Shown here: positions 3,843 to 45,715 of the stretch, in pieces
Numbering within the stretch: the first letter of the stretch is position 1
Layout of the letters: the number at the start of each line of letters is the position of its first letter
Notes under the pieces: generated by a model
Told to the model about the DNA's origin: nothing
Databases searched by the model: none
Seen by the model: the letters and a program-made list of their open reading frames with translations, nothing else
Assembly (NCBI RefSeq): GCF_006345805.1
Contig: NW_021826202.1
Span: 1 to 45,715 of the forward strand
DNA length: 45,715 nucleotides
Direction: 5' to 3'
From: Octopus sinensis
Lineage: Eukaryota
Position numbers and translations under genes: made by a program

Positions 3843-6800
3843 CAGGTCAGCTTCGATCGATCAGGCTTGATCAAAGGCTTTCCAGCCTTGACTCTCCCTT
3901 TCGATGATTGCAATGATGATGATGATGATGATAATAATTATAACATGAATTCCACTCTACCTTGCTCCTATAAATCTGGGGTCTTTTCTATGTAAAAAAG
4001 AGGACAGGTCAGCTTCGATCGATCAGGCCTGATGAAAGGCTTTCCAGCCTTGACTCTCCCTTTCGATGATTGCAATGATGATGATGATAATAATTATAAC
4101 ATGAATTCCACTCTACCTTGCTCCTATAATCTGGGTCTTTTCTATGTAAAGAGGACAGGTCAGCTTCGATCGATCAGGCCTGATGAAAGGCTTTCCAGCC
4201 TTGACTCTCCCTTTCGATGATTGCAATGATGATGATGATGATGATGATAATAATTATAACATGAATTCCACTCTACCTTGCTCCTATAAATCTGGGGTCT
4301 TTTCTATGTAAAAAAGAGGACAGGTCAGCTTCGATCGATCAGGCCTGATGAAAGGCTTTCCAGCCTGACTCTCCCTTTCGATGATTGCAATGATGATGAT
4401 GATAATAATTATAACATGAATTCCACTCTACCTTGCTCCTATAAATCTGGGGTCTTTTCTATGTAAAAAAGAGGACAGGTCAGCTTCGATCGATCAGGCC
4501 TGATGAAAGGCTTTCCAGCCTTGACTCTCCCTTTCGATGATTGCAATGATGATGATGATAATAATTATAACATGAATTCCACTCTACCTTGCTCCTATAA
4601 ATCTGGGGTCTTTTCTATGTAAAAAAGAGGACAGGTCAGCTTCGATCGATCAGGCCTGATGAAAGGCTTTCCAGCCTTGACTCTCCCTTTCGATGATTGC
4701 AATTGATGATGATGATGATAATAATTATAACATGATTCCACTCTACCTTGCTCCTATAAATCTGGGGTCTTTTCTATGTAAAAAAGAGGAGCACAGGTCA
4801 GCTTCGATCGATCAGGCCTGATGAAAGGCTTCCAGCCTTGACCTCCCTTTCGATGATTGCAATGATGATGATGATAATAATTATAACATGAATCCACTCT
4901 ACTACCTTGCTCCTATAAATCTGGGGTCTTTTCTATGTAAAAAAGAGGACAGGTCAGCTTCGATCGATCAGGCTGATGAAAGGCTTTCCAGCCTTGACTC
5001 TCCCTTTCGATGATTGCAATGATGATGATGATAATATTATAACATGAATTCCACTCTACCTTGCTCCTATAAATCTGGGGTCTTTTCTATGTAAAAAAGG
5101 AGGACAGTCAGCTTCGATCGATCAGGCCTGATGAAAGGCTTTCCAGCCTTGACTCTCCCTTTCGATGATTGCAATGATGATGATGATAATAATTATAACA
5201 TGAATTCCACTCTACCTTGCTCCTATAAATCTGGGGTCTTTTCTATGTAAAAAAGAGGACAGGTCAGCTTCGATCGATCAGGCCTGATGAAAGGCTTTCC
5301 AGCCTTGACTCTCCCTTTCGATGATTGCAATGATGATGATGATAATAATTTAACATGAATCGCACTCTACCTGTCTCCTATAAATCTGGGGTCTTTTCTA
5401 TGTAAAAAAGAGGACAGGTCAGCTTCGATCGATCAGGCCTGATGAAAGGCTTTCCAGCCTTGACTCTCCCTTTCGATGATTGCAATGATGATGATGATGA
5501 TAATAATTATAACATGAATTCCACTCTACCTTGCTCCTATAAATCTGGGGTCTTTTCTATGTAAAAAAGAGGACAGGTCAGCTTCGATCGATCAGGCCTG
5601 ATGAAAGGCTTTCCAGCCTTGACTCTCCCTTTCGATGATTGCACTGATGATGATGATAATAATTATAACATGAATTCACTCTACCTTGCTCCTATAAATC
5701 TCTGGGGTCTTTTCTATGTAAAAAAGAGGACCAGGTCAGCTTCGATCGATCAGGCCTGATGAAAGGCTTTCCAGCCTTGACTCTCCCTTTCGATGATTGC
5801 AATGATGATGATGATGATAATAATATAACATGAATTCCACTCTACCTTGCTCCTATAAATCTGGGGTCTTTTCTATTAAAAAGAGGACAGGTCAGCTTCG
5901 ATCGATCAGGCCTGATGAAAGGCTTTCCAGCCTTGACTCTCCCTTTCGATGATTGCAATGATGATGATGATGATATAATTATAACATGAATTCCACTCTA
6001 ACCTTGCTCCTATAAATCTGGGGTCTTTTCTATGTAAAAAAGGGACAGGTCAGCTTCGATCGATCAGGCCTGATGAAAGGCTTTCCAGCCTTGACTCTCC
6101 CTTTCGATGATTGCAATGATGATGATGATAATAATTATAACATGAATTCCACTCTACCTTGCTCCTATAAATCTGGGGTCTTTTCTATGTAAAAAAGAGG
6201 ACAGGTCAGCTTCGATCGATCAGGCCTGATGAAAGGCTTTCCAGCCTTGACTCTCCCTTTCGATGATTGCAATGATGATGATGATAATAATTATAACATG
6301 AATTCACTCTACCTTCCTGCTCCTATAAATCTGGGTTCTTTTCTATGTAAAAAAGAGGACAGGTCAGCTTCGATCGATCAGGCCTGATGAAAGGCTTTCC
6401 AGCCTTGACTCTCCCTTTCGATGATTGCAATGATGATGATGATAATATTATAACATGAATTCCACTCTACCTTGCTCCTATAAATCTGGGGTCTTTTCTA
6501 TGTAAAAAAAGAGGACAGGTCAGCTTCGATCGATCGATCAGCCTGATGAAAGGCTTTCAGCCTTGACTCTCCCTTTCGATGATTGCAATGATGATGATGA
6601 TAATAATTATACATGAATTCCACTCTACCTTGCTCCTATAAATCTGGGGTCTTTTCTATGTAAAAAAGAGGACAGGTCAGCTTCGATCGATCAGGCCTGA
6701 TGAAAGGCTTTCCAGCCTTGACTCTCCTCTCCTTCGATGATTGCAATGATGATGGATGTTATGATGATGATATAATAATTATAACATGAATTCCACTCTA

Positions 6801-7474
6801 CCTTGCTCCTATAAATCTGGGGTCTTTTCTATGTAAAAAAGAGGACAGGTCAGCTTCGATCGATCAGGCCTGATGAAAGGCTTTCCAGCCTTGACTCTCC
6901 CTTTCGATGATTGCAATGATGATGATGATAATAATTATAACATGAATTCCACTCTACCTTGCTCCTATAAATCTGGGGTCTTTTCTATGTAAAAAAGAGG
7001 ACAGGTCAGCTTCGATCGATCAGGCCTGATGAAAGGCTTTCCAGCCTTGACTCTCCCTTTCGATGATTGCAATGATGATGATGATAATAATTATAACATG
7101 AATTCCACTCTACCTTGCTCCTATAAATCTGGGGTCTTTTCTATGTAAAAAAGAGGACAGGTCAGCTTCGATCGATCAGGCCTGATGAAAGGCTTTCCCT
7201 TACTCTCTCCCTTTCGAGATTGCAATGATGATGATGATAATAATTATAACATGAATTCCACTCTACCTTGCTCCTATAAATCTGGGGTCTTTTCTATGTA
7301 AAAAAGAGGACAGGTCAGCTTCGATCGATCAGGCCTGATGAAAGGCTTCCAGCCTTGACTCTCCCTTTCGATGATTGCAATGATGATGATGATAATAATT
7401 ATAACATGAATTCCACTCTACCTTGCTCCTATAAATCTGGGGTCTTTTCTTCTACGTAAAAAAAAAAAAGGGGA
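3843..7474. repeat. Tandem array of a 156-bp unit, 23 copies
   Basis: Unit AGGACAGGTCAGCTTCGATCGATCAGGCCTGATGAAAGGC...GGGGTCTTTTCTATGTAAAAAAG. Unit starts at about 3843, 4001, 4152, 4317, 4472, 4628, 4787, 4946, 5101, 5256, 5411, 5570, 5727, 5884, 6043, 6198, 6356, 6512, 6669, 6842, 6998, 7154, 7307. Confidence 0.97.
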
Positions 7475-7479
7475 CGAGA

Positions 7480-10330
7480 ATGGATTATGCACCACAACCA
7501 CCACCACCATCCTTCCCATCATCACCGCCACCACCTCCATTTCATTTTATTCATTCCTCCTCCCAGCCACCCTCTCAGTTTGATTAACTCTTCACACTAT
7601 CTCTGCTGCACTGCTGTGAACTCCCAATGTTAGGGAGCAGCAGAATGGTAAAGGTAAAGGGGTGAGGAGGAGGTGCGGCATGGTGTAAATAGGGTGCAGC
7701 AGAGTGCAGGGATGAAGAGGATGAAGAACTAGTGGTGGTGGTGGTGGTGGTGTTTGTCTTGGTAGTAAGTCGTGCTGTGATGGTGCACTGTTGTGTTGTG
7801 TAGTATAAATAGGGTACAGGAGAGGGGGAGCTGTGGTGGTGGTGGTGGTGGTGGGTGGTAGTATTGATGGTGAGTGTTGAGGATGGCGGCGGTGGTGATA
7901 GTTATAACCGTAGTGGTAGTGCTGATGGCGGCGATAGTGATGGTGGTACTGGCAGTGGTGGTGGTGATAGTGGTAACCGTAGTAGTAGGGGTGGTGATGG
8001 TGGTAACTGCAGTGGTAGTGATGATGGTGGTAACCGTAGTGGTAGGGCTGAAGGCGATGGTGGAGGTGATGGTGGTGGTGGTGATGATGGTAACTGCAGT
8101 GGTAGTGGTGATGGTGGTAGTAGTGGTGGTGGTGATAGTGGTAACTGTAGTGGTAGGGCTGATGGCGGCAGTGGTGATAGTGGTAACCTAACCGTAGTGG
8201 TGGTGGTGGTGATGTGGATGCTAGTGTTGAAGGTGGCGGCGGTGGTGATGGTAGTAACCGTAGTGGTAGTGGTGATGATAGTGATGGTTGTGGTTGGTGT
8301 TGGTGGTAGTTGCAGTAGAAGCACTAGTGGTGGTTAATATTGAGCTGGTGTTGGTGGCGATGGTGGTTGTGTTGGCAACGTTACTGGCGATGGTGATGGT
8401 GGTGGTGGTGGTGTTTCGTCACTCAGGTATCAATCAGATATATTTTGGTGGTGGTGGTGGTGGTAGTAGTAGTAGTCATAGTAGAAAATGACAGTGGTGA
8501 TGGTATGAGTAGTAATAATTGTGGTGGTAAATGGTATGGTGGTACTGACAGTGCTGGAAGATGGTATGGTGATGATAGTAGCGTTGGTGGAGGTGGCGGA
8601 GGGGTAGTGGTTATAATTACCATCGCTACCATTGCCACTAATCCACTTCCCCAACCCTCTACACCATCCACCTACTGACCTATTTAACGACATAACTGAA
8701 TCCGCCCCCTCCCTTTTTTTTAATCCCCTGCTCACCCCCGGTCTTGCTCCCTGCTTCCACCTCCACCAATGGTCCCAACGCTGGTGTACTTACTCTTTCA
8801 TCACCCTACAAGATATTAAGATGATATAACGATGATGATGATGATGATGGTGATGATAATGATGATGTCCATGGTGATGATGATGATAATGATGATGTCC
8901 ATGATGGTGATGAGTGAGACGATCATCATCAAGTACATTTTGATTAAGTGGTATGATGGTTAATGGCAACGAGAATGATGGTGAAGAAGGGGGGCGGGGT
9001 GGGGAAGAGGGCTTGATGGTGAGGATAATATTCATAATGACATCTTCGACATAACGATTGGCTGCTGACGATGATGATAATGTTAACGACGGCGATGATG
9101 ATAATGATGATGATGACATTGGAGGCTGTTTTTGTTGTTATTGCCCTTTGCTAATGATAATAACTTAGTTAATGATGATGATGGTGATGATGATAACTAT
9201 AATAATAATAATAATAATAATAATAACCAGATGACGTTGATGACACCAGACCATTGGCAAATTAAGACCGTTAAAATGATGGCGGCGGTGGCACCGGTGA
9301 TGGTAGCAGCAGCGGTGGTGGTGGTGAATGGTGGCGGTGGTGGTGGTGTTGGTAGTGTGGTTAATGATGTTGGCCGCCATATTGTTGTTTATGTTGTTAT
9401 TGTTGCTGATTGTGGTGGTGGTGGTAGTAGTGGTGATGATTGCGATAGTAATGGTGGTGGTGGTGGTTGGTGGTGATGGTTGCGATAGTAATGGTGGTGG
9501 TGGTGGTGGTGATGGTTGCGATAGTAATGGTGGTGGTGGTGGTGGTGGTGGTGGTGGTGATGGTTGCGATAGTAATGGTGGTGGTGGTGGTGGTGATGGT
9601 TGCGATAGTAATGGTGGTGGTGGTGGCGTTCTGTTAATGACGTCGGCGGGGGTAATTATTACAATCCACCCTTATTGTTCATTGGTGACCTCATCACTTA
9701 CGATACCAGCATCACTCTTTAATACTCCTCCCCCCACTCGCACACACACACGTACGCACACTCCCGCGCGCATACATGCTCCGAAGTGATGCTGACAATA
9801 ACAGCAAGTAATGATGACATGTGACGATAAATGCAAAACAATGATGACGATGACGACGATGATAATGGTGGTGGTGGTGGTGGTGGTGGTGGTGACAGTT
9901 TTCGTAATGGTAATAATTACGTTGCTTATGGTTATTGAAGGTGTTGTAGGTAATTATGACGTTGCTGCTGCTGCTGCTGCTAATGGTAACGACGGTGGGG
10001 TTGCTGGTAGCGGCAGTGGTGGTAGTAATAACGGGAGTAGTAGTAGTGGTGGTGGTGGTGGTGGTGGTAGTGGTGGTGGTGGTGGTGGTAGTAGTAGTAG
10101 TAGTAGTGGTGGTGGTGGTGGTGGTAGTGGTAGTAGTAGTAGTAGTGGTAATGGTGGTGGTAATGGTGCTGGTGCTTCTACTGCCGCTGAGATGAACTAT
10201 GGCAAAGGTGATAATTGCGATAAAGATAATGTTGATGATGACGATGGTGATGATGAAGACAGCGATAATGATGGTGGTAGTTTGTCGAAAATGATGATGA
10301 GGATGGCGATAATGATGATTATGACATCAT
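7480..10330. repeat. Large GGT/GAT/AGT trinucleotide low-complexity block with embedded minisatellites
   Basis: Degenerate GGTAACCGTAGTGGTAG repeats at about 7890-8260; five GGTGATG(G/A)TTGCGATAGTAAT(GGT)n units at about 9432-9625. Confidence 0.9.
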
Positions 10331-10553
10331 TTCCGCTCTACCTTAACCTTGTGAATTTGAAAATTTTTTCTATGTTAAAGGAGATAGGAATGGTCTAAGC
10401 ATCGTATAGTTACACATACACACACTTATGTAAATTATACGTACATAAAACAGACACCAACACACACACGTACATTTTTATTGATAGTGTGATCCGAAAA
10501 AATCTTGGTACAGGAAGTTAGTAAATATCAAATATGTACACAGCTTGTATATA

Positions 10554-11575: not shown

Positions 11576-11785
11576 GCGGCGAGCTGGCAGAAACATTAGC
11601 ACGCCGGGCGAAGTGCGTAGACGTATTTCGTCTGCCGCTACGTTCTGAGTTCAAATTCCGCCGAGGTCGACTTTGCCTTTCAACCTTTTGGGGTCGATTA
11701 AATAAGTACCAGTTACGCACCGGGGTCGATATAATCGACTTAATCCCTTTGTTTGTCCTTGTTTGGCCCCTTGTGGGTAGTAAAG

Positions 11786-12361: not shown

Positions 12362-12791
12362 AATTTACTCTAGGGACAAGGCCTCAAATTTTGGAGGAGG
12401 GTGCAAGTTGATTAAATCGACCCTTGTACGCCACTGGTACTTATTTTAATGGATCTCGAAATGATGAAAGCAAAGTCGACCTCGGCGGAATTTGAACCTG
12501 GGCCTTAAAGACGGACGAATTGCCGCTAAACATTTTGCCCGGCGTGCTAACGATTCTGCCAGCTCGCCGTCTTTATAACAATGATGATAATCCTTTCTGC
12601 TATAGACACGAGGTCTGAAATGTTGGGGGATTGCATCGACCCAAGTGCGTAACTGGTACTTATTTAATCGACCCCGAAAGGATGAAAAGGCAAGTCGACC
12701 TCGGCGGAATTTGAACTTAGAACGTAAAGACGGACGAAATGCCACTAAGCATTTCTTCCAGTGGACTAACGATTCTGCCAGCTCGCCGCCT
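12362..12791 (-). mobile_element. Two adjacent SINE family B copies (about 12362-12571 and 12590-12791)
   Basis: Each contains AAAGTCGACCTCGGCGGAATTTGAAC and ends CTAACGATTCTGCCAGCTCGCCG. Confidence 0.85.
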
Positions 12792-12831: not shown

Positions 12832-13068
12832 AACGGGATGGGCTACTCGACCTGAAGAAAATTCTAACTGGGTCCCACCTGCAAGGTCATGCGCTGTTTA
12901 CCTTGATACGAGATCAACATGTTGCGCATGTGTGGTTGTGATGCATGCGCCTGATGTACCCTTATCAGACGGGTAGTCATGATGGGTATATTGGGCGTCG
13001 TATATTTGTACCCCACTTTGATGGCATGCGTTGCTGTCTCACTCAATAATAATAATAATAATAATAAT
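12832..13068 (+). mobile_element. Probable retroposon 3' fragment with (AAT)n tail
   Basis: Complex sequence ending ...CTCACTC followed by (AAT)n; recalled as a common octopus repeat, not verified. Confidence 0.4.
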
Positions 13069-13270
13069 CATTTCTCCATTTTAGAAACTTTATTCTTACC
13101 AGTGAAAATTAACCCAGTATTTACACGTTATTATTTGTAGCTTTATCTGCTTCGAGTTTCCTCTGATTCAAAAAAGAATTATTTCGCATTCTTTAAGCGT
13201 GCATGCAGTGTGTAAACTTTTGAAGTATTTGTGCTTTTAGGCGATGTAAACAGTAATACTTGTTCGTGCA

Positions 13271-13305
13271 TTAATATCTCCCCTTTTTTTTCTTTACAGG
13301 TAAGT
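13271..13305 (+). other. Candidate recursive splice site (3' acceptor directly followed by 5' donor)
   Basis: TTAAT (putative branch A at 13274), 19 uninterrupted pyrimidines 13277-13295, ACAG (AG 13298-13299), then GTAAGT 13300-13305; no other AG between 13254 and 13297. Confidence 0.6.
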
Positions 13306-13805
13306 GTCTGAACAGCAATTTGTTTTAATATATTTACATGGAATCGTTTGGATTGATGTTTGGAACTAAATTCTTCTGAAGGTATTGTAGGGAATTTTTT
13401 CCTCGTTCTTTATTTGTTTCATTTATTAAAAGTCTTTGAGTCAGCAGGTGTTGGTATTTTCTTTTTATCATAGCATCTATATTATTAATTAATTAATTTA
13501 TTACATTTTCCCGCTCGCTACATTAAGTTTGATAGCATTAACTTGAGATTTATTAACTTTTATGGCTCATGCAAATGACGTCCGTAGATAAATTGTTTAC
13601 GCCTACTCGAATGCTTAAATGTTTTTACTAAAAATTCTTTCCTTGAGAAAACATATTCGAGTTTATAAGAATTCCTTTAAAACTACATATGTGATACACC
13701 TTATTGTTTATTTTCAAAATCAATATTGAAATTTGAGAGGGCACAGCTCTAGTCTACGGATATACGATTAAAATTTCGTAGGAAAGTATCACAAGATAAA
13801 TTCTT

Positions 13806-14001
13806 CAAGCCGAGCCAACTGGCAAGAGACTTAGGCCAAGACTAAGATGGTTGGATAATATCCTTAATCCCGATTGACCACACTTGGGAATCTGGCTAGA
13901 AAGAAATATGACAGTCGTTTCTTACTGCACCCTGCGGAGACTCTGCCCTCCATAACCCTCCCAGGAATAGTGGGTGGAGAAGATGAGTGGGTAGATAGAT
14001 G
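13806..14001 (+). mobile_element. Decayed 3' end of an RTE-clade LINE ORF2
   Basis: Translates QAEPTGKRLRPRLRWLDNI (13806-13862), like the GKRPRGRPxxRWxDxI C-terminal motif of RTE elements, then HLGI and a GATGG-like tail; in-frame stop present. Confidence 0.5.
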
Positions 14002-15301
14002 GAATATTCAAATTAGGGTGCGTATATTACATGGTATTGGCTTACAAAATGTATCTATCAACCAACTGGTGTTTACCTGAGATCGTATTGAGCCACCGCT
14101 TTATATATATATATATATAATTCGTCTTATGCTTAGAAGTGATGCACGTTACCAGAATTTCCGACTCGTCTGATAGAACAAACCTCTCCAGTCCTAATTA
14201 TAGTAACCGTGTGAAAGAAGTTAGCACTGGCTAGCTTGTACTGGTGTAGTTGTATGATATATAGTCATGATATTTTGAATGCATTTAATACGCACGTTTT
14301 AGATAATTGTGCAATAGATAAATGAGAATTTTATTTCTTACGCAAACTCTTCCTCAGTTAAGACATCAAAATATAAACAAATTGATGGAATTCGCCCTTT
14401 GTATATGATCAGAGCCGTTTAAGTTTTTTTTACTAGATGAAGAGAGGGCGAGGCTAGAAATGGGTGAACTATCTATAAATAGAGAAAGGGGAAGAGATGG
14501 TGGGAGAGTAAATGTGTGAGAAATGCAATCTTATGGGAAAAAGAGAAAAGAAAGGGTCACTTAAATAAAAGAATAAGGGAACACATAAGTCCAATAACTA
14601 CTAATGAATACATGACTGAAAGCAAAGAATAAAAACAATAAACATACGGATTCACACATATTCAAATATATATGCAAATATATATGCAAATATATATGCA
14701 TATATACATACACACAGACACTCGTAAACATGTACATATACTTGTGCATATGCATGTATATACATGCTCACTATCAAAAATCGGGCATCAACATTATGAA
14801 CATCAACATTATCGTCACTAGCATTATTTTATTTTGAAATTTCATATTCAAGGTTTCCCACGCTGTTGTTATCGGTTCGGTGCATCTGCATCATTGCATA
14901 TCGCTTCGTCTACACCCACCCACCCAGCAGCTCCACCACCTCCTTTCCCCCCACTAATATTCTGAGGTGTATGACGTCACCACTTCTTCTCCCTCCCCCC
15001 CCCGTCATATTAATTAATATCCCACCGTTACAGCTTACTGCATTTTTAACACCCTATAGAGGTCTACACCCAATTCGTTCTATATAGCCACACCAGTTCT
15101 CTTTCTTTCTCCCTCTCTCCGGCTGCCTCTCTTTCTCTCTCTTTTAATCTCTCTCTCACCCTCTCCCTCTCTCCCTCTCCCTCTTTATTCTAGCCTCTCT
15201 TGTCGTAAACGTCATTTCAATATCTTCATTTTGAATCTGAACTCAGGAGAGGTTTTCCGAGGACTCGAGATCGTACTGAGCCACCAGTTTACTAAACATC
15301 C

Positions 15302-17118: not shown

Positions 17119-17289
17119 TCCGATTATTGTTTGCCTCATAAGGATTTACAAACTTCCAAAGAATGTGAAATAATTTTTTGAACGGTTGAACTCGAAGTAG
17201 ATAAAGCTATAATTAATAAATAGTAGCGTGTAAATATCGGGCTAAAAAAACTGTTTAGATAGGAAAAAAAGTTAAAGACTACCCGTGGG

Positions 17290-19708: not shown

Positions 19709-20280
19709 GTGGCGAGCTGGCAGAACCGTTAGCACGCTGGACGAAATGCTCAGCAGTATTTCGTCCGCCGTCACGTTCTGAGTTTAAATTCCGTCGAGGT
19801 CGACTTTGCCTTTCATCCTTTCGGGGTCGATAAATTAAGTACCAGTTACGCACTGGAGTCGATATAATTGACTTAATCCGTTTGTCTGTCCTTGTTTGTC
19901 CTCTCTGTGTGTAGCCCCTTGTGGGTAGTAAAGAAATAGGTATTTCGTCTGCCGCTACGTTCTGAGTTCAAATTCCGTCGAGGTCGACTTTGCCTTTCAT
20001 CCTTTCGGGGTCGATAAATAAGTACCAGTTACGTACTGGGGTCGATATAATTGACTTAATCCGTTTGTCTGTCCTTGTTTGTCCTCTCTGTGTGTTAGCC
20101 CTTGTGGGTAGTAAAGAAATAGGTATTTCGTCTGCCGCTACGTTCTCTGGTTCAAATTCGTCGAGGTCGACTTTGCCTTTCTTTCATCCTTTCGAGGTCG
20201 ATTAAATAGTAGTTACCGAGTTACGCACTGCGGTCGATGTAATCGACTTAATCCGTTGTCTGTCCTTGTTTGTCCCCTCG
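19709..20280 (+). mobile_element. SINE family B tandem trimer
   Basis: One headed copy followed by two head-less units starting AGGTATTTCGTCTGCCGCTACG at about 19938 and 20121. Confidence 0.85.
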
Positions 20281-20584: not shown

Positions 20585-20680
20585 ATATGTATATATGTAT
20601 TGTATCTTATCCACGTTTCTGTCAATCTATCCTTATACGCATATAGGTACGTGTATACATGTATCTATCTATCTACCTAC

Positions 20681-20716
<36 letters not shown>

Positions 20717-21009
20717 TTATCTATTTACTAATCTAATCTCTTTATCCATGTATGGACGGATGGAAGGATATACCCATCCTTCATGCCCATCTAAGCAGGG
20801 TACCCGCATCGTCCCACAGCAGATATATCTACTCGATGTAAACGAAGCTCCCACCTCCAATATAACTTTCATTGTTTCTCTATATTTAGAGCCCCCCCCC
20901 CGCTTCTTTTCGCCCCCCCCCCCCGCCCCACCCTCCAACCAGAGAACTTTTCCAGAACGTCAGCTGTTTGGGAATAACGAACGACACGAAGCAGGAACTT
21001 TAGGGAGTT

Positions 21010-22075
21010 GATGAGAAAATTAGAGAGAGAGAAAGAGAGAGAGAGAGAAAGGGAGCATGGGGAGGGGGGTGAGTGCGAGAAATTGATAAATAGATGAAGA
21101 GTCTGAAAAAGAGAGAGAATGTGTGTGTGTGTGTGTGTGTTGTGTGTGTGAGAGAGAGAGAGAGAGTGAGAAAGAATGTGAGAAAGGGAGAGATGAAATA
21201 CGTGTAAGAGAAGCTATTAAGGGAGACAAATAGGGATATATAGATAGATAGATACAGAGAGGGAGAGAGAGAGAGATGGGGAGTTGAGGATACGGCTGAG
21301 GGGCACCCACGGATGCAGTATAGGTATGGCGGCAGCGTTAGCGATAGTGGTGGTGGTGGTTATGTATATGGTAGTATAGGAGGCGGTGGAGGCTTGACTT
21401 GGGAGTCTTACATTAAAATGCAGAGAAACAGGTTTTCTGAAAGGTAGTAGAAGATGGCGGGGGGTGGGCACTTGGATTGTTCCTTTTTGTTTTGTTTTAT
21501 TTTGTTTGTTTTTGTTTTTTTTCTGTTCTTGTTTTTTTGTTCTTCGGTGGAATGTTTAGAATTTTCTGGCTCTTTTAATATAAGACAAGAAGAGATGAAG
21601 ATAACCGAAGGATCTTGTTGGCGGCGGCGGCGGCGGTGGTGGTGCGTGTTGTGACGATGGTTGTAAATGGTAGGCTGGTGCTGTTAGTGATGTCGAAGTG
21701 GTGGTGGTGGTATGGTGGTGGCTGGGTGGGGAGCTGGAGTTGAGGGTAGTTTCGGGAGTTAGTGATAATGGGGGTGTCTGTAGTGTTGTTGTTGTTGTTG
21801 TTTGTTGTTGGTGGTGGTGGTTGTGTTTGTGGTGGTGTTAACCATAGTGTGGGAGTAATGCTGTTCATGATGATGGCGATGATGATGATGGTTGTGACGA
21901 ATGTAGTACCACTAGTGTTAGTTCTGTTCTTGATACCTGTTGTGGTGGTGGCGGTGGCGATATTGTACCTCCAATGTTGTTGTTCTTGGTGGTGGTATCA
22001 GAATTAATAGGTGTATTGTTTATTGTATGTATCTATTGTTATCTGAGTAGTAGTAGTAGTAGTAGTAGTAGTATA
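21010..22075. repeat. GA, GT, GGT/GTT and AGT low-complexity stretch
   Basis: Seen directly. Confidence 0.75.
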
Positions 22076-25569: not shown

Positions 25570-25607
<38 letters not shown>

Positions 25608-25610
<3 letters not shown>

Positions 25611-25975
25611 ATATAAACGGCAGTTTGTCTGTGCGTGTTTCTGTGTGTCTGTTTGCTTGTACCTTCACCCTGACCACGGCTTTCAACCGATTCTGATGAA
25701 ACTTGACACACTCATAGCCCAATGTCATAATTCAAAACTAACGCAGCGAAAATTTTGAAAAGTTCCCCCAGTTCTGAAAAAAATCGATAAATTCGACATG
25801 GGGTCCAGAATCAGAAACACAAACTGTCTAGGGGACGCAACTCACCTTTTTTAACTAAAAAAAAAAATTACCATCATTTTTTCCCATTTTTTTGCTATTT
25901 TTTGGCTAAACTCTCTAAAAATGCTTTATAGTTATTTCCCTTACAAACCTGAGCAACGCCGGGCGATACTGCTAG
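25608..25975 (+). mobile_element. Non-autonomous Helitron-like element, family H1
   Basis: A|TC start (TCTATATAAACGGCAGTTTGTCTG), CCCG/CGGG-type hairpin about 8 nt before a CTAG|T end; three copies in the window. Confidence 0.75.
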
Positions 25976-39668: not shown

Positions 39669-40073
39669 TCTCTATATATAAACGGCAGTTTGTCTCTCTA
39701 TATATAAACGGCAGTTTGTCTGTCTGCGTGTCTGTGTGTCTGTTTGGTTGTACCCTCACCCTGACCACGGCTTTCAACCGATCCTGATGAAACTTGACAC
39801 ACACATAGCCCAATGTCATAATTCAAAACTAACACAGCGAAAATTTTGAAAAGTTCCCCCAGTTCTGAAAAAATCGATGAATTCGACATGGGGTCGAGAA
39901 TCAGAAACACAAACCACAGACTGTCTAGGGGACGCAACTCGACCTTTTTAACTCTCAAAAAAAATTTACCATATTTTTTTTCCATTTTTTTCTATTTTTT
40001 GGCTATAACTCTCTAAAAATGCTTTGTAGTTATTTCCCTTACAAACCCGAGCAACGCCGGGCGATACTGCTAG
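39669..40073 (+). mobile_element. Non-autonomous Helitron-like element H1 with a duplicated 5' head
   Basis: A|TC start, TCTCTATATATAAACGGCAGTTTG present twice, hairpin plus CTAG|T end. Confidence 0.78.
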
Positions 40074-40935: not shown

Positions 40936-41661
40936 ACACACAAGCACAGTGAGAGGTACTCACACACGCTCCCACACATACAGCTATGTACTCCTCGGAC
41001 CGTTAGATCTCAGGTTTCGTGCAAACGTGTACGCGTCAGCGAAGCGGAAAGATTGCAACAGGGCTCGGCTGACATATCTATTTTGTTCGGATTGAAAAGT
41101 TTAAGTTACCGAATCGCGGAGTGGGGTATCAGATTGATTTTCACCGCCTAGCGGAGAAATACAAACGATTAAATTGAAATTCCACTGATTTCATCCTACA
41201 TTAGCATACTCTACCCGTGTCTGGCACGTAATTTATATTATATTATTTAGAAATATATCCCCATTTTTTTTTTATTTTCTCGCAGAAAATCTTGTGCCCA
41301 TAAGATTCGTAGATCATATTTTATAATGATCGGATGCACATGTAAAATATTCACGTTCGATATACATGTAAAAATATACTTATATACAATGTTGCTATAA
41401 GCATAAACATATCCGTTGGATCTCAAGTTTCGTGCAAGCGTGCAATCGTCAGCAAAACGGAGAGTGATTTTTGGAGGCAAGCGAATTTATTTTCTTCTGT
41501 TATAAGAGCTACGTCATTGGGGTTAAAATATTGAAATCCACCCTCACACACACACACACCTCCAATGCGAACTATAACGTTGAAATAGCATTCACCGCAT
41601 TGCACATTAAAGTGCTATATCCTTATAAAGGGAATCTTATATTTTATGTATACATATATAT

Positions 41662-41870
41662 ATTTCTTTATTGCCCACAAGGGGCTAAACATAGAGGGGA
41701 CAAACAAAGGGATTAAGTCGATTATATCGACCCCAGTGCGTAACTGGTACTTTATTTATCGACCCCGAAAGGATGAAAGGCAAAGTCGACCTCGGCGGAG
41801 TTTGAACTCAGAACGTAACGGCAGACGAAATACGGCTACGCATTTCGCCCGGCGTGCTAACGTTTCTGCC
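41662..41870 (-). mobile_element. SINE family B, head clipped by the adjacent family C copy
   Basis: Ends CTAACGTTTCTGCC and lacks AGCTCGCCGCC. Confidence 0.85.
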
Positions 41871-42643: not shown

Positions 42644-43025
42644 CTAGCAGTATCGCCCGGCGTTGCTCAGGTTTGTAAGGGAAATAACTATAAAGCATTT
42701 TTAGAGAGTTATAGCCAAAAAATAGCAAAAAAATGGAAAAAAATGATGGTAAATTTTATTTTGGGTTTAAAAAAGGATGGAGTTGCGTCCCCTAGACAGT
42801 TTGTGGTTCATGTTCTAATTTTCCCCCCATGTCGAATTTATCGATTTTTTTCAGAACTGGGGGACTTTTCAAAATTTTGGCTGCGTTGTTTTGTGATTAT
42901 GACATTGGGCTATGTGTGTGTCAAGTTTCATCAGAATCGGTTGAAAGCCGTGGTCAGGGTGAGGGTACAACCTGACAGACACACAGAAACACGCACAGAC
43001 TAACTGCCGTTTATATATAGAGAGA
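42644..43025 (-). mobile_element. Non-autonomous Helitron-like element H1
   Basis: Reverse complement of the 25608 and 39669 family with A|TC and CTAG|T ends. Confidence 0.78.
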
Positions 43026-44396: not shown

Positions 44397-44419
44397 TGTA
44401 TATATATATCCATAAGCCT

Positions 44420-44647
44420 ATTTCTTTACCCACAAGGGGCTAAACACAGAGGGAACAAACAAGGACAGACATAGATATTAAGTCGATTACATCGACCCCA
44501 GTTTGTAACTGGTACTTAATTTATGGACCCCGAAAGGATTAAAGGCAAAGTCGACCTCGGCGGAATTTGAACTCACAACGTAACGCAGACGAAATACCGC
44601 TAAGCATTTCGCCCGGCGTGCTAACGTTTCTGCCAGCTCACCGCCTT
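44420..44647 (-). mobile_element. SINE family B, full length
   Basis: TTTCTTTACCCACAAGGGG...CTGCCAGCTCACCGCC. Confidence 0.88.
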
Positions 44648-45079: not shown

Positions 45080-45715
45080 GTTGTACGGAAAGTTCGTGCC
45101 GATTTATAGTACGCTTACCTTCGACTTATTTAGACATGGTTGAGTCCGTAAAATAGGATTTGACTACACCTCCATTTAGAGCACAGTTTAAGCTATCTTT
45201 TTGTGGGAAAAGGTTTATGTTCCTATAACCTGTGTTAATTCTGTAACCCTTTATAATGGAAGATAAAGTTCATTTTCGGCACTTGATGCTTTTTTTTCCG
45301 AAAAAGGAAAAATGCCTGACATACAGCCAAAGAAATATGCGCATTTTACGGTGATGTTTCTTTATCCGAAAGAACTGTACGGAAGTGGTTCGCAAGGTTC
45401 CGAACTGGTGATTGTAGCCTTATAGATAAAGAGCGATTAGGCAGACCATCCACTACAGATGATGACCAAATCAAGTCATTCCCACATTGCACAACCCGAG
45501 AATTGGCAGAAAGCCTCAACCGTCGTTCATGAGCACCTGGTAAATCTTGGGTACCACATGAGTTGAGCGAGAAGAACCTTTTGGATTGCATTTCCATCTG
45601 TGATTCGCTTTATAAACGGAATGAAAACGCACCTTCTTTAAAGCAAATTGTGACAGGTGATGAGAAATGGATTATCTACCGAAATGTTCAGAGAAAGCAA
45701 TCCTGGAGTAAGCGA
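45076..45715 (+). mobile_element. Mariner (Tc1/mariner DD34D-type) transposon, 5' part, inserted in a (TA)n tract; runs off the window
   Basis: ITR-like TTGGGTTGTACGGAAAGTTCGTGCCGATTT after TA; transposase remnants follow. Confidence 0.92.
45256..45715 (+). pseudogene. Mariner transposase pseudogene
   Basis: MEDKVHFRHLML; AKEICAFYGD..SERTVRKWFARFRTGD..GRPS; WVPHEL at 45548-45565; IVTGDEKW at 45647-45670; frameshifts and TGA stops. Confidence 0.92.

What the first reader, a model, noticed from the sequence alone, without database searches (positions are those of the whole stretch)
13254..13305. Textbook recursive splice site (acceptor CAG directly followed by donor GTAAGT) in a repeat-poor island
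Seen: TTAAT with a candidate branch A 25 nt upstream of the AG, 19 uninterrupted pyrimidines, ACAG|GTAAGT and a 44-nt AG-free zone, inside about 700 bp of non-repetitive sequence (about 13070-13800). Established: this zero-nucleotide-exon layout is the ratchet point used to splice very long introns stepwise in Drosophila (e.g. Ubx) and the RS-site of long vertebrate genes. Inference: the window lies in a giant + strand intron that is spliced recursively. I am not aware of recursive splicing being characterised in cephalopods or molluscs, but cannot check the literature here.
Basis: partly seen in the sequence, partly recalled or inferred. Interest (0 to 1): 0.8.

Follow-up and report, generated by a model that had tools for sequence, protein, structure and literature searches.

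The report
Candidate recursive splice site in octopus
A perfect back-to-back splice acceptor and donor sits in unique DNA of an exon-free, repeat-rich stretch of an octopus genome; it is much rarer than chance predicts and looks like the recursive splice sites of flies, but nothing here could show that it is transcribed, conserved or used.

Summary
On the + strand there is TTAAT (13271-13275), 19 straight pyrimidines (13277-13295), ACAG (13296-13299) directly followed by GTAAGT (13300-13305), and a 44-nt AG-free zone.

- **Rarity:** This position has both the best acceptor score and the best donor score in the window. No dinucleotide shuffle reproduces the motif (0 of 100). From real octopus DNA I estimate about 1e-4 to 1.5e-3 such sites per window, or roughly 25-90 per genome.
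- **Organism:** The window is Octopus DNA. The only protein hits are repeat-derived pieces of O. bimaculoides gene models.
- **Context:** 55% of the window is tandem or in-window repeat, and no coding exon was detected. The motif lies in the largest unique island (about 13195-14657), just after a repeat fragment.
- **Not testable here:** host gene, strand of transcription, conservation and RNA evidence. Strand clues conflict.
- **RS-exon:** A clear downstream donor for a cryptic recursive-splicing (RS) exon is missing.

My best reading is a recursive splice site in a long + strand intron (about 0.45). Rivals are chance (about 0.33), an ordinary or cryptic exon edge (about 0.15) and a repeat-borne motif (about 0.07). 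If real, it is a new member of a known kind, in a phylum where recursive splicing has not been described.

The parts
13271..13275 (+). Candidate branch point TTAAT (fits YTRAY/yUnAy); branch A at 13274, 25 nt before G13299
   Evidence: Read directly. Branch use is inferred, not shown.
13254..13297 (+). AG-exclusion zone (44 nt without AG) upstream of the acceptor AG
   Evidence: AGEZ 44; previous AG at 13252-13253.
13277..13295 (+). Polypyrimidine tract, 19 uninterrupted C/T
   Evidence: The 16 positions scored are all pyrimidines, score 11.2 of 11.5.
13296..13299 (+). Acceptor ACAG; splice junction after G13299
   Evidence: Acceptor PWM score 12.7, equal to the strongest real octopus acceptors in L001 (13.2 and 12.5).
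13300..13305 (+). Donor GTAAGT; with the preceding CAG it matches the CAG|GTAAGT consensus at 9 of 9 positions
   Evidence: Donor PWM score 8.6 of a maximum 9.1, the best in the window on either strand.
13300..13447 (+). Possible cryptic RS-exon (13300-13381 or 13300-13447), ended by weak donors aag|GTATTG (13382) or cag|GTGTTG (13448); stops in all three frames by 13328
   Evidence: Donor scores are -0.5 and 0.9 only, and no donor scoring 2 or more lies within 600 nt. This is a weak point of the recursive reading.
13195..14657 (.). Largest stretch of the window without tandem or in-window repeats; holds the motif
   Evidence: self-BLAST plus TRF mask. No copy in 111 kb of other O. bimaculoides DNA. 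Genome-wide copy number was not testable.
13109..13194 (+). Fragment of a dispersed repeat (76-82% to 17158-17245 minus strand; MAFFT suggests similarity up to about 13262); ends upstream of the motif
12835..13069 (+). Dispersed octopus repeat with an (AAT)n tail, immediately upstream of the island
   Evidence: 87.5% identity to L001 70886-71125. Its translations hit O. bimaculoides gene models P0001-P0003.

Best explanation
This is a recursive splice site (ratchet point) on the + strand, inside a long intron of an octopus gene whose exons lie outside the window.

Proposed mechanism (inferred): U2AF and U2 recognise the 19-nt pyrimidine tract, the TTAAT branch point and CAG13299. The upstream exon is then ligated to G13300. 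That ligation rebuilds a consensus donor (exon end + GTAAGT), which U1 uses to splice on to the next recursive site or to the downstream exon. The giant intron is therefore removed in pieces and no nucleotide of this site stays in the mRNA. If the weak downstream donors at 13382 or 13448 were used instead, an out-of-frame, stop-containing cryptic exon would be included. The much stronger GTAAGT should out-compete them, as donor competition does in Drosophila.

Shown here: the motif, its strength, its rarity and its place in unique DNA. Inferred: transcription on the + strand, intron context and actual use.
For: - **Consensus match.** The site matches (y)nncag|gtaagt exactly, with a branch point and a 44-nt AG-free zone (consensus from PMC2773006).
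- **Best of both signals.** The best acceptor and the best donor of the window fall on the same nucleotide: combined score 17.3 against 3.1 for the runner-up. The acceptor is as strong as the best real acceptors of an O. bimaculoides gene.
- **Rarity.** 0 of 100 shuffles reproduce it. In 313 kb of strand-bases of real octopus DNA only 6 full pyrimidine tract + YAG sites exist, at least one of which (L001 53200) is a true acceptor. Times the GTAAGT frequency, this gives about 5e-9 to 2e-8 per strand-base. That is 4e-4 to 1.5e-3 per window, and less once the AG-free zone and branch point are required.
[quoted passage not shown] In flies 539 recursive sites were detected, in 63-70% of very long introns (PMC6110457).
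- **Context.** The window has no detectable coding exon, stops in all frames follow the site, and the site lies outside all detected repeats.
- **Strand.** PAS hexamers are depleted on the + strand in unique sequence (30 vs 54, p=0.012).
Against: - No host gene, transcript, junction read, lariat or orthologue could be examined.
- The prior that an exon-free window lies in a + strand intron is only about 0.1-0.2 (my estimate).
- The T>A skew of the window (+0.017 to +0.04) is nearer the intergenic value than the +0.083 of the one transcribed octopus gene available.
- No respectable downstream donor for the cryptic RS-exon that fly and vertebrate recursive splicing requires (best 0.9 bits; requirement from PMC8605326).
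- The only long octopus introns I could inspect (39.2 kb and 17.6 kb in L001) hold no such site, so fly-like density is not evident.
- No other recursive-like site lies on the + strand in the remaining 45 kb.
- My PWMs are approximate and were written from general knowledge. The strict thresholds were set after seeing the site.
Confidence: 0.45

Rival explanations
1. Chance juxtaposition. A pyrimidine-rich tract that happens to end in CAG lies next to a chance GTAAGT, in DNA that is not transcribed on the + strand (intergenic, or antisense to a gene). It has no function.
For: - A 2.7-Gb genome is still expected to hold roughly 25-90 such sites by chance, and loosely defined versions occur about 0.1 times per window (PMC2773006 gives about 0.1 per 100 kb per strand).
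- The first stage reported whatever stood out, and the number of windows it scanned is unknown.
- No exon was found in the window, and the T>A skew is close to intergenic.
- No good RS-exon donor and no second recursive-like site in 45 kb.
- Pyrimidine tracts are common in this microsatellite-rich DNA.
Against: - The per-window probability is only about 1e-4 to 1.5e-3 for this quality.
- The best acceptor and the best donor of 91 kb of strand sequence coincide to the nucleotide.
- A branch-point motif and a 44-nt AG-free zone come on top of that.
Confidence: 0.33
2. An ordinary splice site of an unannotated exon. It would be either the donor of a small exon ending at 13299 (for example 13241-13299, 59 nt, behind the acceptor tgcttttag|G), or the acceptor of a non-coding or poison exon starting at 13300, in an mRNA isoform or a long non-coding RNA.
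For: - One frame is open across 13216-13308, and a plausible acceptor sits at 13240.
- Both splice signals are individually as good as real octopus sites.
- Vertebrate recursive sites often overlap cassette or poison exons (PMC6110456, PMC8605326).
- ORFs shorter than 44-50 aa were not included in the protein searches, so a short exon would have been missed.
Against: - Stops occur in all three frames within 27 nt after 13300, and there is no usable donor within 600 nt. An exon starting at 13300 would be non-coding and poorly defined.
- An exon whose last 23 nt are a perfect pyrimidine tract + CAG is as improbable as the chance case.
- No protein match to any ORF around the site.
Confidence: 0.15
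3. Repeat-borne motif. The tract and the AG|GT belong to a low- or mid-copy transposable element, for example the A-rich tail of a minus-strand retroposon read as a pyrimidine tract, as in antisense-Alu exonisation. If so, many copies of the 'site' exist.
For: - The window is 55% repeats, and repeat fragments abut the site (12835-13069 and 13109-13194).
- On the minus strand the tract reads AAAGAAAAAAAAGGGGAGA, which is tail-like.
- Being single-copy in 157 kb of octopus DNA does not exclude up to about 1e4 copies per genome.
Against: - No second copy of 13195-14657 in the window, L001 or L002.
- No target-site duplication for a minus-strand insertion.
- The neighbouring repeat's other copy diverges before the motif.
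- No transposon protein domain in the island.
Confidence: 0.07

Closest known systems
Drosophila intronic ratchet points / zero-nucleotide recursive splice sites (Ubx, kuz, Bx and hundreds more; Hatton 1998, Burnette 2005, Duff 2015, Pai 2018 PMC6110457, Joseph & Lai 2021 PMC8605326)
   Same: It matches the same consensus (y)nncag|gtaagt exactly, with juxtaposed strong acceptor and donor, a long pyrimidine tract and a branch point at typical distance. It lies far from any detectable exon, and the sequence after the site is out of frame and full of stops.
   Different: Fly sites are defined by RNA intermediates, saw-tooth coverage, deep conservation and a cryptic RS-exon of about 50 nt with its own donor. 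Here there is no RNA or conservation evidence, and only very weak donors at +82 and +148. The host is a mollusc with a genome about 20 times larger.
Vertebrate recursive splice sites with RS-exons (Sibley 2015; Zhang 2018 PMC6110456)
   Same: AGGT core with an acceptor stronger than average, a reconstituted strong donor, stop codons in the would-be RS-exon, and the expected setting in very long (often neuronal) introns of a large, repeat-rich genome.
   Different: Human sites depend on exon definition through a conserved downstream donor, and 50-69% have a detected RS-exon. Their reconstituted donors are usually weaker than here. Vertebrates show almost no sense-strand enrichment of the motif (ratio 1.0-1.5, PMC2773006).
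'Zero-length exon' in rat tropomyosin (Grellscheid & Smith 2006, as described in PMC2773006) and poison or cryptic exons
   Same: An acceptor directly followed by a donor inside an intron, where inclusion of the downstream sequence would bring in stop codons.
   Different: That case regulates a nearby alternative exon rather than subdividing a giant intron. No neighbouring exon is detectable here.
Antisense-retroposon exonisation (poly(A) tail read as a pyrimidine tract; my own knowledge, not checked in the library)
   Same: A T-rich tract next to repeat fragments in very repeat-rich DNA.
   Different: No repeat copy covers the motif and there is no target-site duplication. The tract is mixed C/T rather than a pure T run.

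Membership tests
Recursive splice site / ratchet point (Drosophila type) | Juxtaposed acceptor and donor around AG|GT matching (y)nncag|gtaagt | tested here: met
   Searches give an exact match. It has the top acceptor and top donor PWM scores in the window.
Recursive splice site / ratchet point (Drosophila type) | Usable branch point 18-50 nt upstream and no intervening AG | tested here: met
   TTAAT with A13274 at -25, and a 44-nt AG-free zone. This is at sequence level only; branch use was not shown.
Recursive splice site / ratchet point (Drosophila type) | Lies on the sense strand of a long (over about 10-20 kb) intron of a transcribed gene | not testable with these tools
   No eukaryotic DNA search was available. 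No exon was found in the window. Indirect strand clues conflict.
Recursive splice site / ratchet point (Drosophila type) | Cryptic RS-exon with its own downstream donor, weaker than the ratchet-point donor (PMC8605326) | tested here: inconclusive
   Only weak candidates exist: 13382 aag|GTATTG (-0.5 bits), 13387 and 13448 cag|GTGTTG (0.9 bits). Nothing scores 2 bits or more within 600 nt. The stops and frame are as expected.
Recursive splice site / ratchet point (Drosophila type) | Strong evolutionary conservation of the acceptor|donor core relative to its flanks | not testable with these tools
   No orthologous locus was obtainable. ORF look-ups found nothing on record and two metagenome scans returned nothing.
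Recursive splice site / ratchet point (Drosophila type) | RNA intermediates: exon-to-site junction reads, segment lariats, saw-tooth nascent coverage | not testable with these tools
Recursive splice site / ratchet point (Drosophila type) | Lineage-wide excess of the motif on the sense strand of long introns | tested here: inconclusive
   Only one octopus gene with long introns could be fetched (L001, introns of 39.2 and 17.6 kb). It holds no AG|GTRAGT site with a good tract. About 0.001 sites are expected by chance and about 0.5-1 if density were fly-like, so the sample is too small.
Vertebrate RS-exon type recursive site | RS-exon defined by a conserved competing donor; premature stop codon if included | tested here: inconclusive
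   Stops in all frames by 13328, so that part is met. The donors are weak and conservation could not be tested.
Ordinary internal coding exon boundary | Open reading frame continuing across the junction into an exon with protein homology | tested here: not met
   Stops in all three frames within 27 nt downstream. The upstream open frame is at most 84 nt. No protein hit to any ORF at 13182-14197.
Dispersed repeat / transposable element copy | Further copies of the segment elsewhere in the genome | tested here: inconclusive
   No copy of 13195-14657 in the window or in 111 kb of O. bimaculoides DNA. The whole genome could not be searched.

The most novel reading that the evidence does not exclude
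Octopuses remove giant introns by Drosophila-style zero-nucleotide recursive splicing at consensus ratchet points. This site would be the first example in a mollusc or any lophotrochozoan. Together with insects, sea urchin (motif enrichment only) and vertebrates, that would make recursive splicing an ancestral bilaterian way of handling long introns. It would also make cephalopod long neuronal genes a new system to study it.
Probability: 0.4. Interest if true: 0.55.

Novelty: new member of a known kind. Interest (0 to 1): 0.35.

Why it matters
Recursive splicing is documented by RNA evidence only in Drosophila and vertebrates. Motif enrichment suggests it in other insects and in sea urchin (PMC2773006). 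No paper in the held library addresses it in molluscs or cephalopods.

Cephalopod genomes are large and repeat-rich, and they have long introns. Whether they follow the fly solution (many conserved ratchet points) or the vertebrate one (few RS-exons) bears on two questions: how long introns are spliced accurately, and how old the mechanism is.

One site cannot answer that. It does give a precise test, because public octopus total RNA-seq and genome alignments would settle it within hours. If the site is not used, the finding is simply a rare chance motif.

Tried and rejected
- **Exact look-ups of window ORFs** (13334-13471 minus strand, 12979-13140 +, 20595-21011 +) to find the source record or other assemblies: nothing on record.
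- **Exact 20-mer scans of JGI metagenome contigs**, one for the site and one for a control 20-mer in the island: 0 hits each. The collection does not hold this locus, so this says nothing about conservation.
- **Protein search with ORFs around the site**: only repeat-derived matches to O. bimaculoides models, all confined to 12867-13137. Nothing matched 13182-14197.
- **Protein search with 44 unique ORFs of 44 aa or more across the window**: no hit, so no host gene was identified.
- **Third protein search with SINE/repeat peptides**, meant to harvest many octopus genes for a sense/antisense motif count: only one more retrievable locus (L002). P0001, P0002 and P0006 are not on record. The lineage-wide enrichment test could not be done at useful scale.
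- **SINE orientation as a strand indicator:** no bias in the yardstick gene, so uninformative.
- **Minus-strand retroposon tail as the origin of the tract:** no target-site duplication and no repeat copy. Not supported, but not excluded.
- **Rfam and tRNA scans:** nothing found, so no intronic RNA gene indicates a host strand.
- **Pfam on ten long ORFs:** only a mariner HTH at the window end.
- **Markov simulation** timed out. It was replaced by empirical counts.
- **Counting positions with 19 or more of 20 pyrimidines** overstates the chance rate, because long microsatellites count many times. I replaced it with counts of tract ends.

Full report
**1. What is there**

The + strand at 13254-13305 reads TAATACTTGTTCGTGCATTAATATCTCCCCTTTTTTTTCTTTACAG|GTAAGT.
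- TTAAT at 13271-13275, with A13274 lying 25 nt before G13299
- 19 uninterrupted pyrimidines at 13277-13295
- ACAG at 13296-13299
- GTAAGT at 13300-13305
- a 44-nt stretch without AG (the previous AG is at 13252-13253)

Only three AGGTAAGT octamers occur in the window on both strands. The other two sit in a GATA microsatellite (30121, +) and behind a purine-rich stretch (25118, minus), so neither has a pyrimidine tract.

**2. Is it more than chance?**

I scored all 278 AGGT sites of the window with simple acceptor and donor position weight matrices (PWMs). The PWMs are approximate metazoan frequencies written from general knowledge and serve only as a ranking device. The site scores 12.7 + 4.6 = 17.3, and the runner-up scores 3.1. 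It carries the best donor of the window on either strand (8.6 of a possible 9.1) as well as the best acceptor.

Shuffle controls:
- Y12-N-YAG|GTAAGT has 1 match and appears in 0 of 100 dinucleotide-preserving shuffles.
- A loose version (GTRAGT, up to 2 mismatches) is expected 0.10 times per window. This agrees with the published background of about 0.1 ratchet-point motifs per 100 kb per strand at an 80% score threshold (PMC2773006).

Shuffles destroy the long pyrimidine tracts of real octopus DNA, so I also counted in real sequence. The sample was the window plus two O. bimaculoides loci, 313 kb of strand-bases in all. Only 6 places have 16 of 16 pyrimidines followed by YAG. These include the site itself and at least one true acceptor, L001 53200. 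Twenty-one places have a slightly weaker tract.

Multiplying by the frequency of GTAAGT after AG (about 2.5e-4 to 3.3e-4) gives about 5e-9 to 2e-8 per strand-base. That corresponds to:
- 4e-4 to 1.5e-3 per window
- roughly 25-90 sites in a 2.7-Gb genome

The numbers fall further once the AG-free zone and a branch motif are also required. An earlier, cruder estimate from the share of positions with 19 or more of 20 pyrimidines overstates the rate, because each long microsatellite counts hundreds of times.

The motif is therefore a real statistical outlier for one window. A whole genome would still hold some tens of chance copies, and the strict thresholds were chosen after seeing the site.

**3. 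Surroundings**

*Organism.* The window is Octopus DNA. The only protein-level matches of ORFs near the site are to O. bimaculoides gene models: a cGMP-dependent kinase, an SVEP1-like protein and PP2A B-alpha. All of them fall in the 12867-13137 ORFs. That segment (12835-13068 plus an (AAT)n tail) is a dispersed repeat, with an 87.5% copy in the PP2A-B locus.

*Repeats.* Tandem repeats and in-window repeats cover 55% of the window. They include:
- a 156-bp satellite at 3843-7450
- many microsatellites
- 18 copies of a SINE of about 180 nt
- a decayed mariner at the 3' end

*The island.* The largest stretch free of such repeats is 13195-14657, and it holds the site. Just upstream, 13109-13194 (possibly up to about 13262) is a diverged copy of 17158-17245 on the other strand. 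The two copies part before the branch point. No copy of the island exists in 111 kb of other octopus DNA.

*No host gene.* Forty-four non-repetitive ORFs of 44 aa or more from the whole window gave no hit among 5.8 billion proteins. Rfam and tRNA scans were empty. No exon or RNA gene therefore identifies a host gene or strand.

**4. Strand of transcription: indirect and conflicting clues**

The one octopus gene I could fetch as a yardstick is PP2A-B, + strand, 65.7 kb (L001).

| Clue | Window | Yardstick |
|---|---|---|
| T>A skew | +0.019 overall; +0.027 to +0.062 in the first 30 kb; +0.017 in unique sequence | +0.083 in the gene (every 10-kb bin +0.05 to +0.13); +0.017 in its intergenic flanks; -0.044 in a neighbouring minus-strand gene |
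| AATAAA/ATTAAA hexamers in unique sequence | 30 on + vs 54 on minus (p=0.012), beyond the 0.87 ratio that base composition predicts | weak asymmetry in the gene, 112 vs 132 |
| SINE orientation | 12 + and 6 minus | 6 + and 5 minus across the whole L001 locus, so uninformative |

The skew looks intergenic or weakly transcribed. The hexamer depletion fits + strand transcription, but the yardstick itself shows little of it. I draw no conclusion from these clues.

**5. Features specific to recursive splicing**

In flies and vertebrates the site is recognised through a short cryptic RS-exon with its own downstream donor, which the regenerated strong donor then out-competes (PMC8605326, PMC6110456).

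- All three frames hit a stop within 27 nt after 13300, as expected for such an exon.
- The downstream donors are poor: aag|GTATTG at +82, att|GTAGGG at +87 and cag|GTGTTG at +148, scoring -0.8 to 0.9 bits. Nothing better lies within 600 nt. This feature is not clearly met.
- The two long introns available from octopus (39.2 and 17.6 kb in L001) contain no AG|GTRAGT with a good tract. The sample is too small to say whether octopus introns are enriched in such sites.

**6. Weighing the readings**

Chance density of a site this good is about 5e-9 to 2e-8 per strand-base. Ordinary exon edges that happen to look like this should be about as rare. The outcome therefore depends on whether octopus has a class of selected recursive sites.

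- Every invertebrate examined shows a 4-22-fold sense-strand excess of the motif in large introns: fly 2.2 vs 0.10 per 100 kb, sea urchin 0.54 vs 0.066.
- Vertebrates show almost none (1.0-1.5) (PMC2773006).
- No mollusc has been examined, and the held literature contains no study of recursive splicing in cephalopods or molluscs.

If octopus carries even a few hundred strong sites, they outnumber chance copies. If it resembles vertebrates, they do not.

I also estimate a prior of about 0.1-0.2 that an exon-free window lies in a + strand intron. The RS-exon donor is missing. Combining these, I put the readings at:
- recursive splice site: about 0.45
- pure chance: about 0.33
- edge of an unannotated or cryptic exon: about 0.15
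- repeat-borne motif: about 0.07

These are judgements built on the counts above, not measurements.

**7. Comparison with known systems and novelty**

In anatomy the site is indistinguishable from a Drosophila ratchet point. Membership cannot be granted, because the defining functional features are untested: sense-strand long intron, RNA intermediates and conservation. One structural feature, the RS-exon donor, is weak. If it is confirmed it would be a new member of a known kind, in a new phylum. That is interesting for the evolutionary reach of recursive splicing, but it is not a new mechanism.

**8. What would settle it**

- Map the window to an annotated octopus assembly.
- Inspect total or nascent RNA-seq for junctions to 13300, lariats and a saw-tooth step.
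- Align the orthologous introns.
- Count the motif by strand in long introns genome-wide.

Noticed in passing
window 12835-13069 (+); L001 70886-71125: A dispersed octopus repeat ending in an (AAT)n tail is annotated as coding sequence in O. bimaculoides gene models. In PP2A B-alpha (P0003) it gives the peptide CTLIRRVVMMGILG...SLNNNNNNN, where the poly-Asn is the microsatellite. Read on the other strand it appears in a cGMP-dependent kinase (P0001) and an SVEP1-like protein (P0002). The repeat is either exonised or mis-annotated.
   Followed up: partly
window 3843-7450: Satellite array with a 156-bp unit, about 23 copies and 94% matches.
   Followed up: no
window 19756-20279 and 17 other places (e.g. 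11623-11780, 12405-12497, 12635-12740, 41661-41833, 44419-44597): A SINE of about 180 nt is present 18 times (12 on +, 6 on minus), including a head-to-tail triple at 19756-20279. ARAGORN and Rfam do not call any tRNA in it.
   Followed up: partly
window 45320-45715 (+): Decayed mariner/Mos1-type transposase. HTH_48 matches at 45320-45529 (E 2.9e-10). The reading frame is broken at 45530 and continues to the window end.
   Followed up: partly
window 39693-39893 and 42825-43025; also 25599-25768: Two inverted copies (88%) of one repeat lie 2.9 kb apart, with a third copy elsewhere. They could be the ends of a DNA transposon or just dispersed copies.
   Followed up: no
whole window, unique sequence: Poly(A)-signal hexamers AATAAA/ATTAAA number 30 on the + strand and 54 on the minus strand (p=0.012). 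This is more asymmetric than base composition predicts (0.87) and more than in the one octopus gene used as a yardstick (112 vs 132).
   Followed up: partly
window 7850-10400: GGT/GTG-rich low-complexity block with GC skew of about +0.4 and long spurious ORFs.
   Followed up: no
L001 26757 (+), inside the 39.2-kb intron of the O. bimaculoides PP2A-B gene: A strong acceptor, tctttctctccgtctcag|GTGTAC (acceptor score 10.9), is followed by a weak donor. It may be an unannotated exon or a weak recursive-type site.
   Followed up: no
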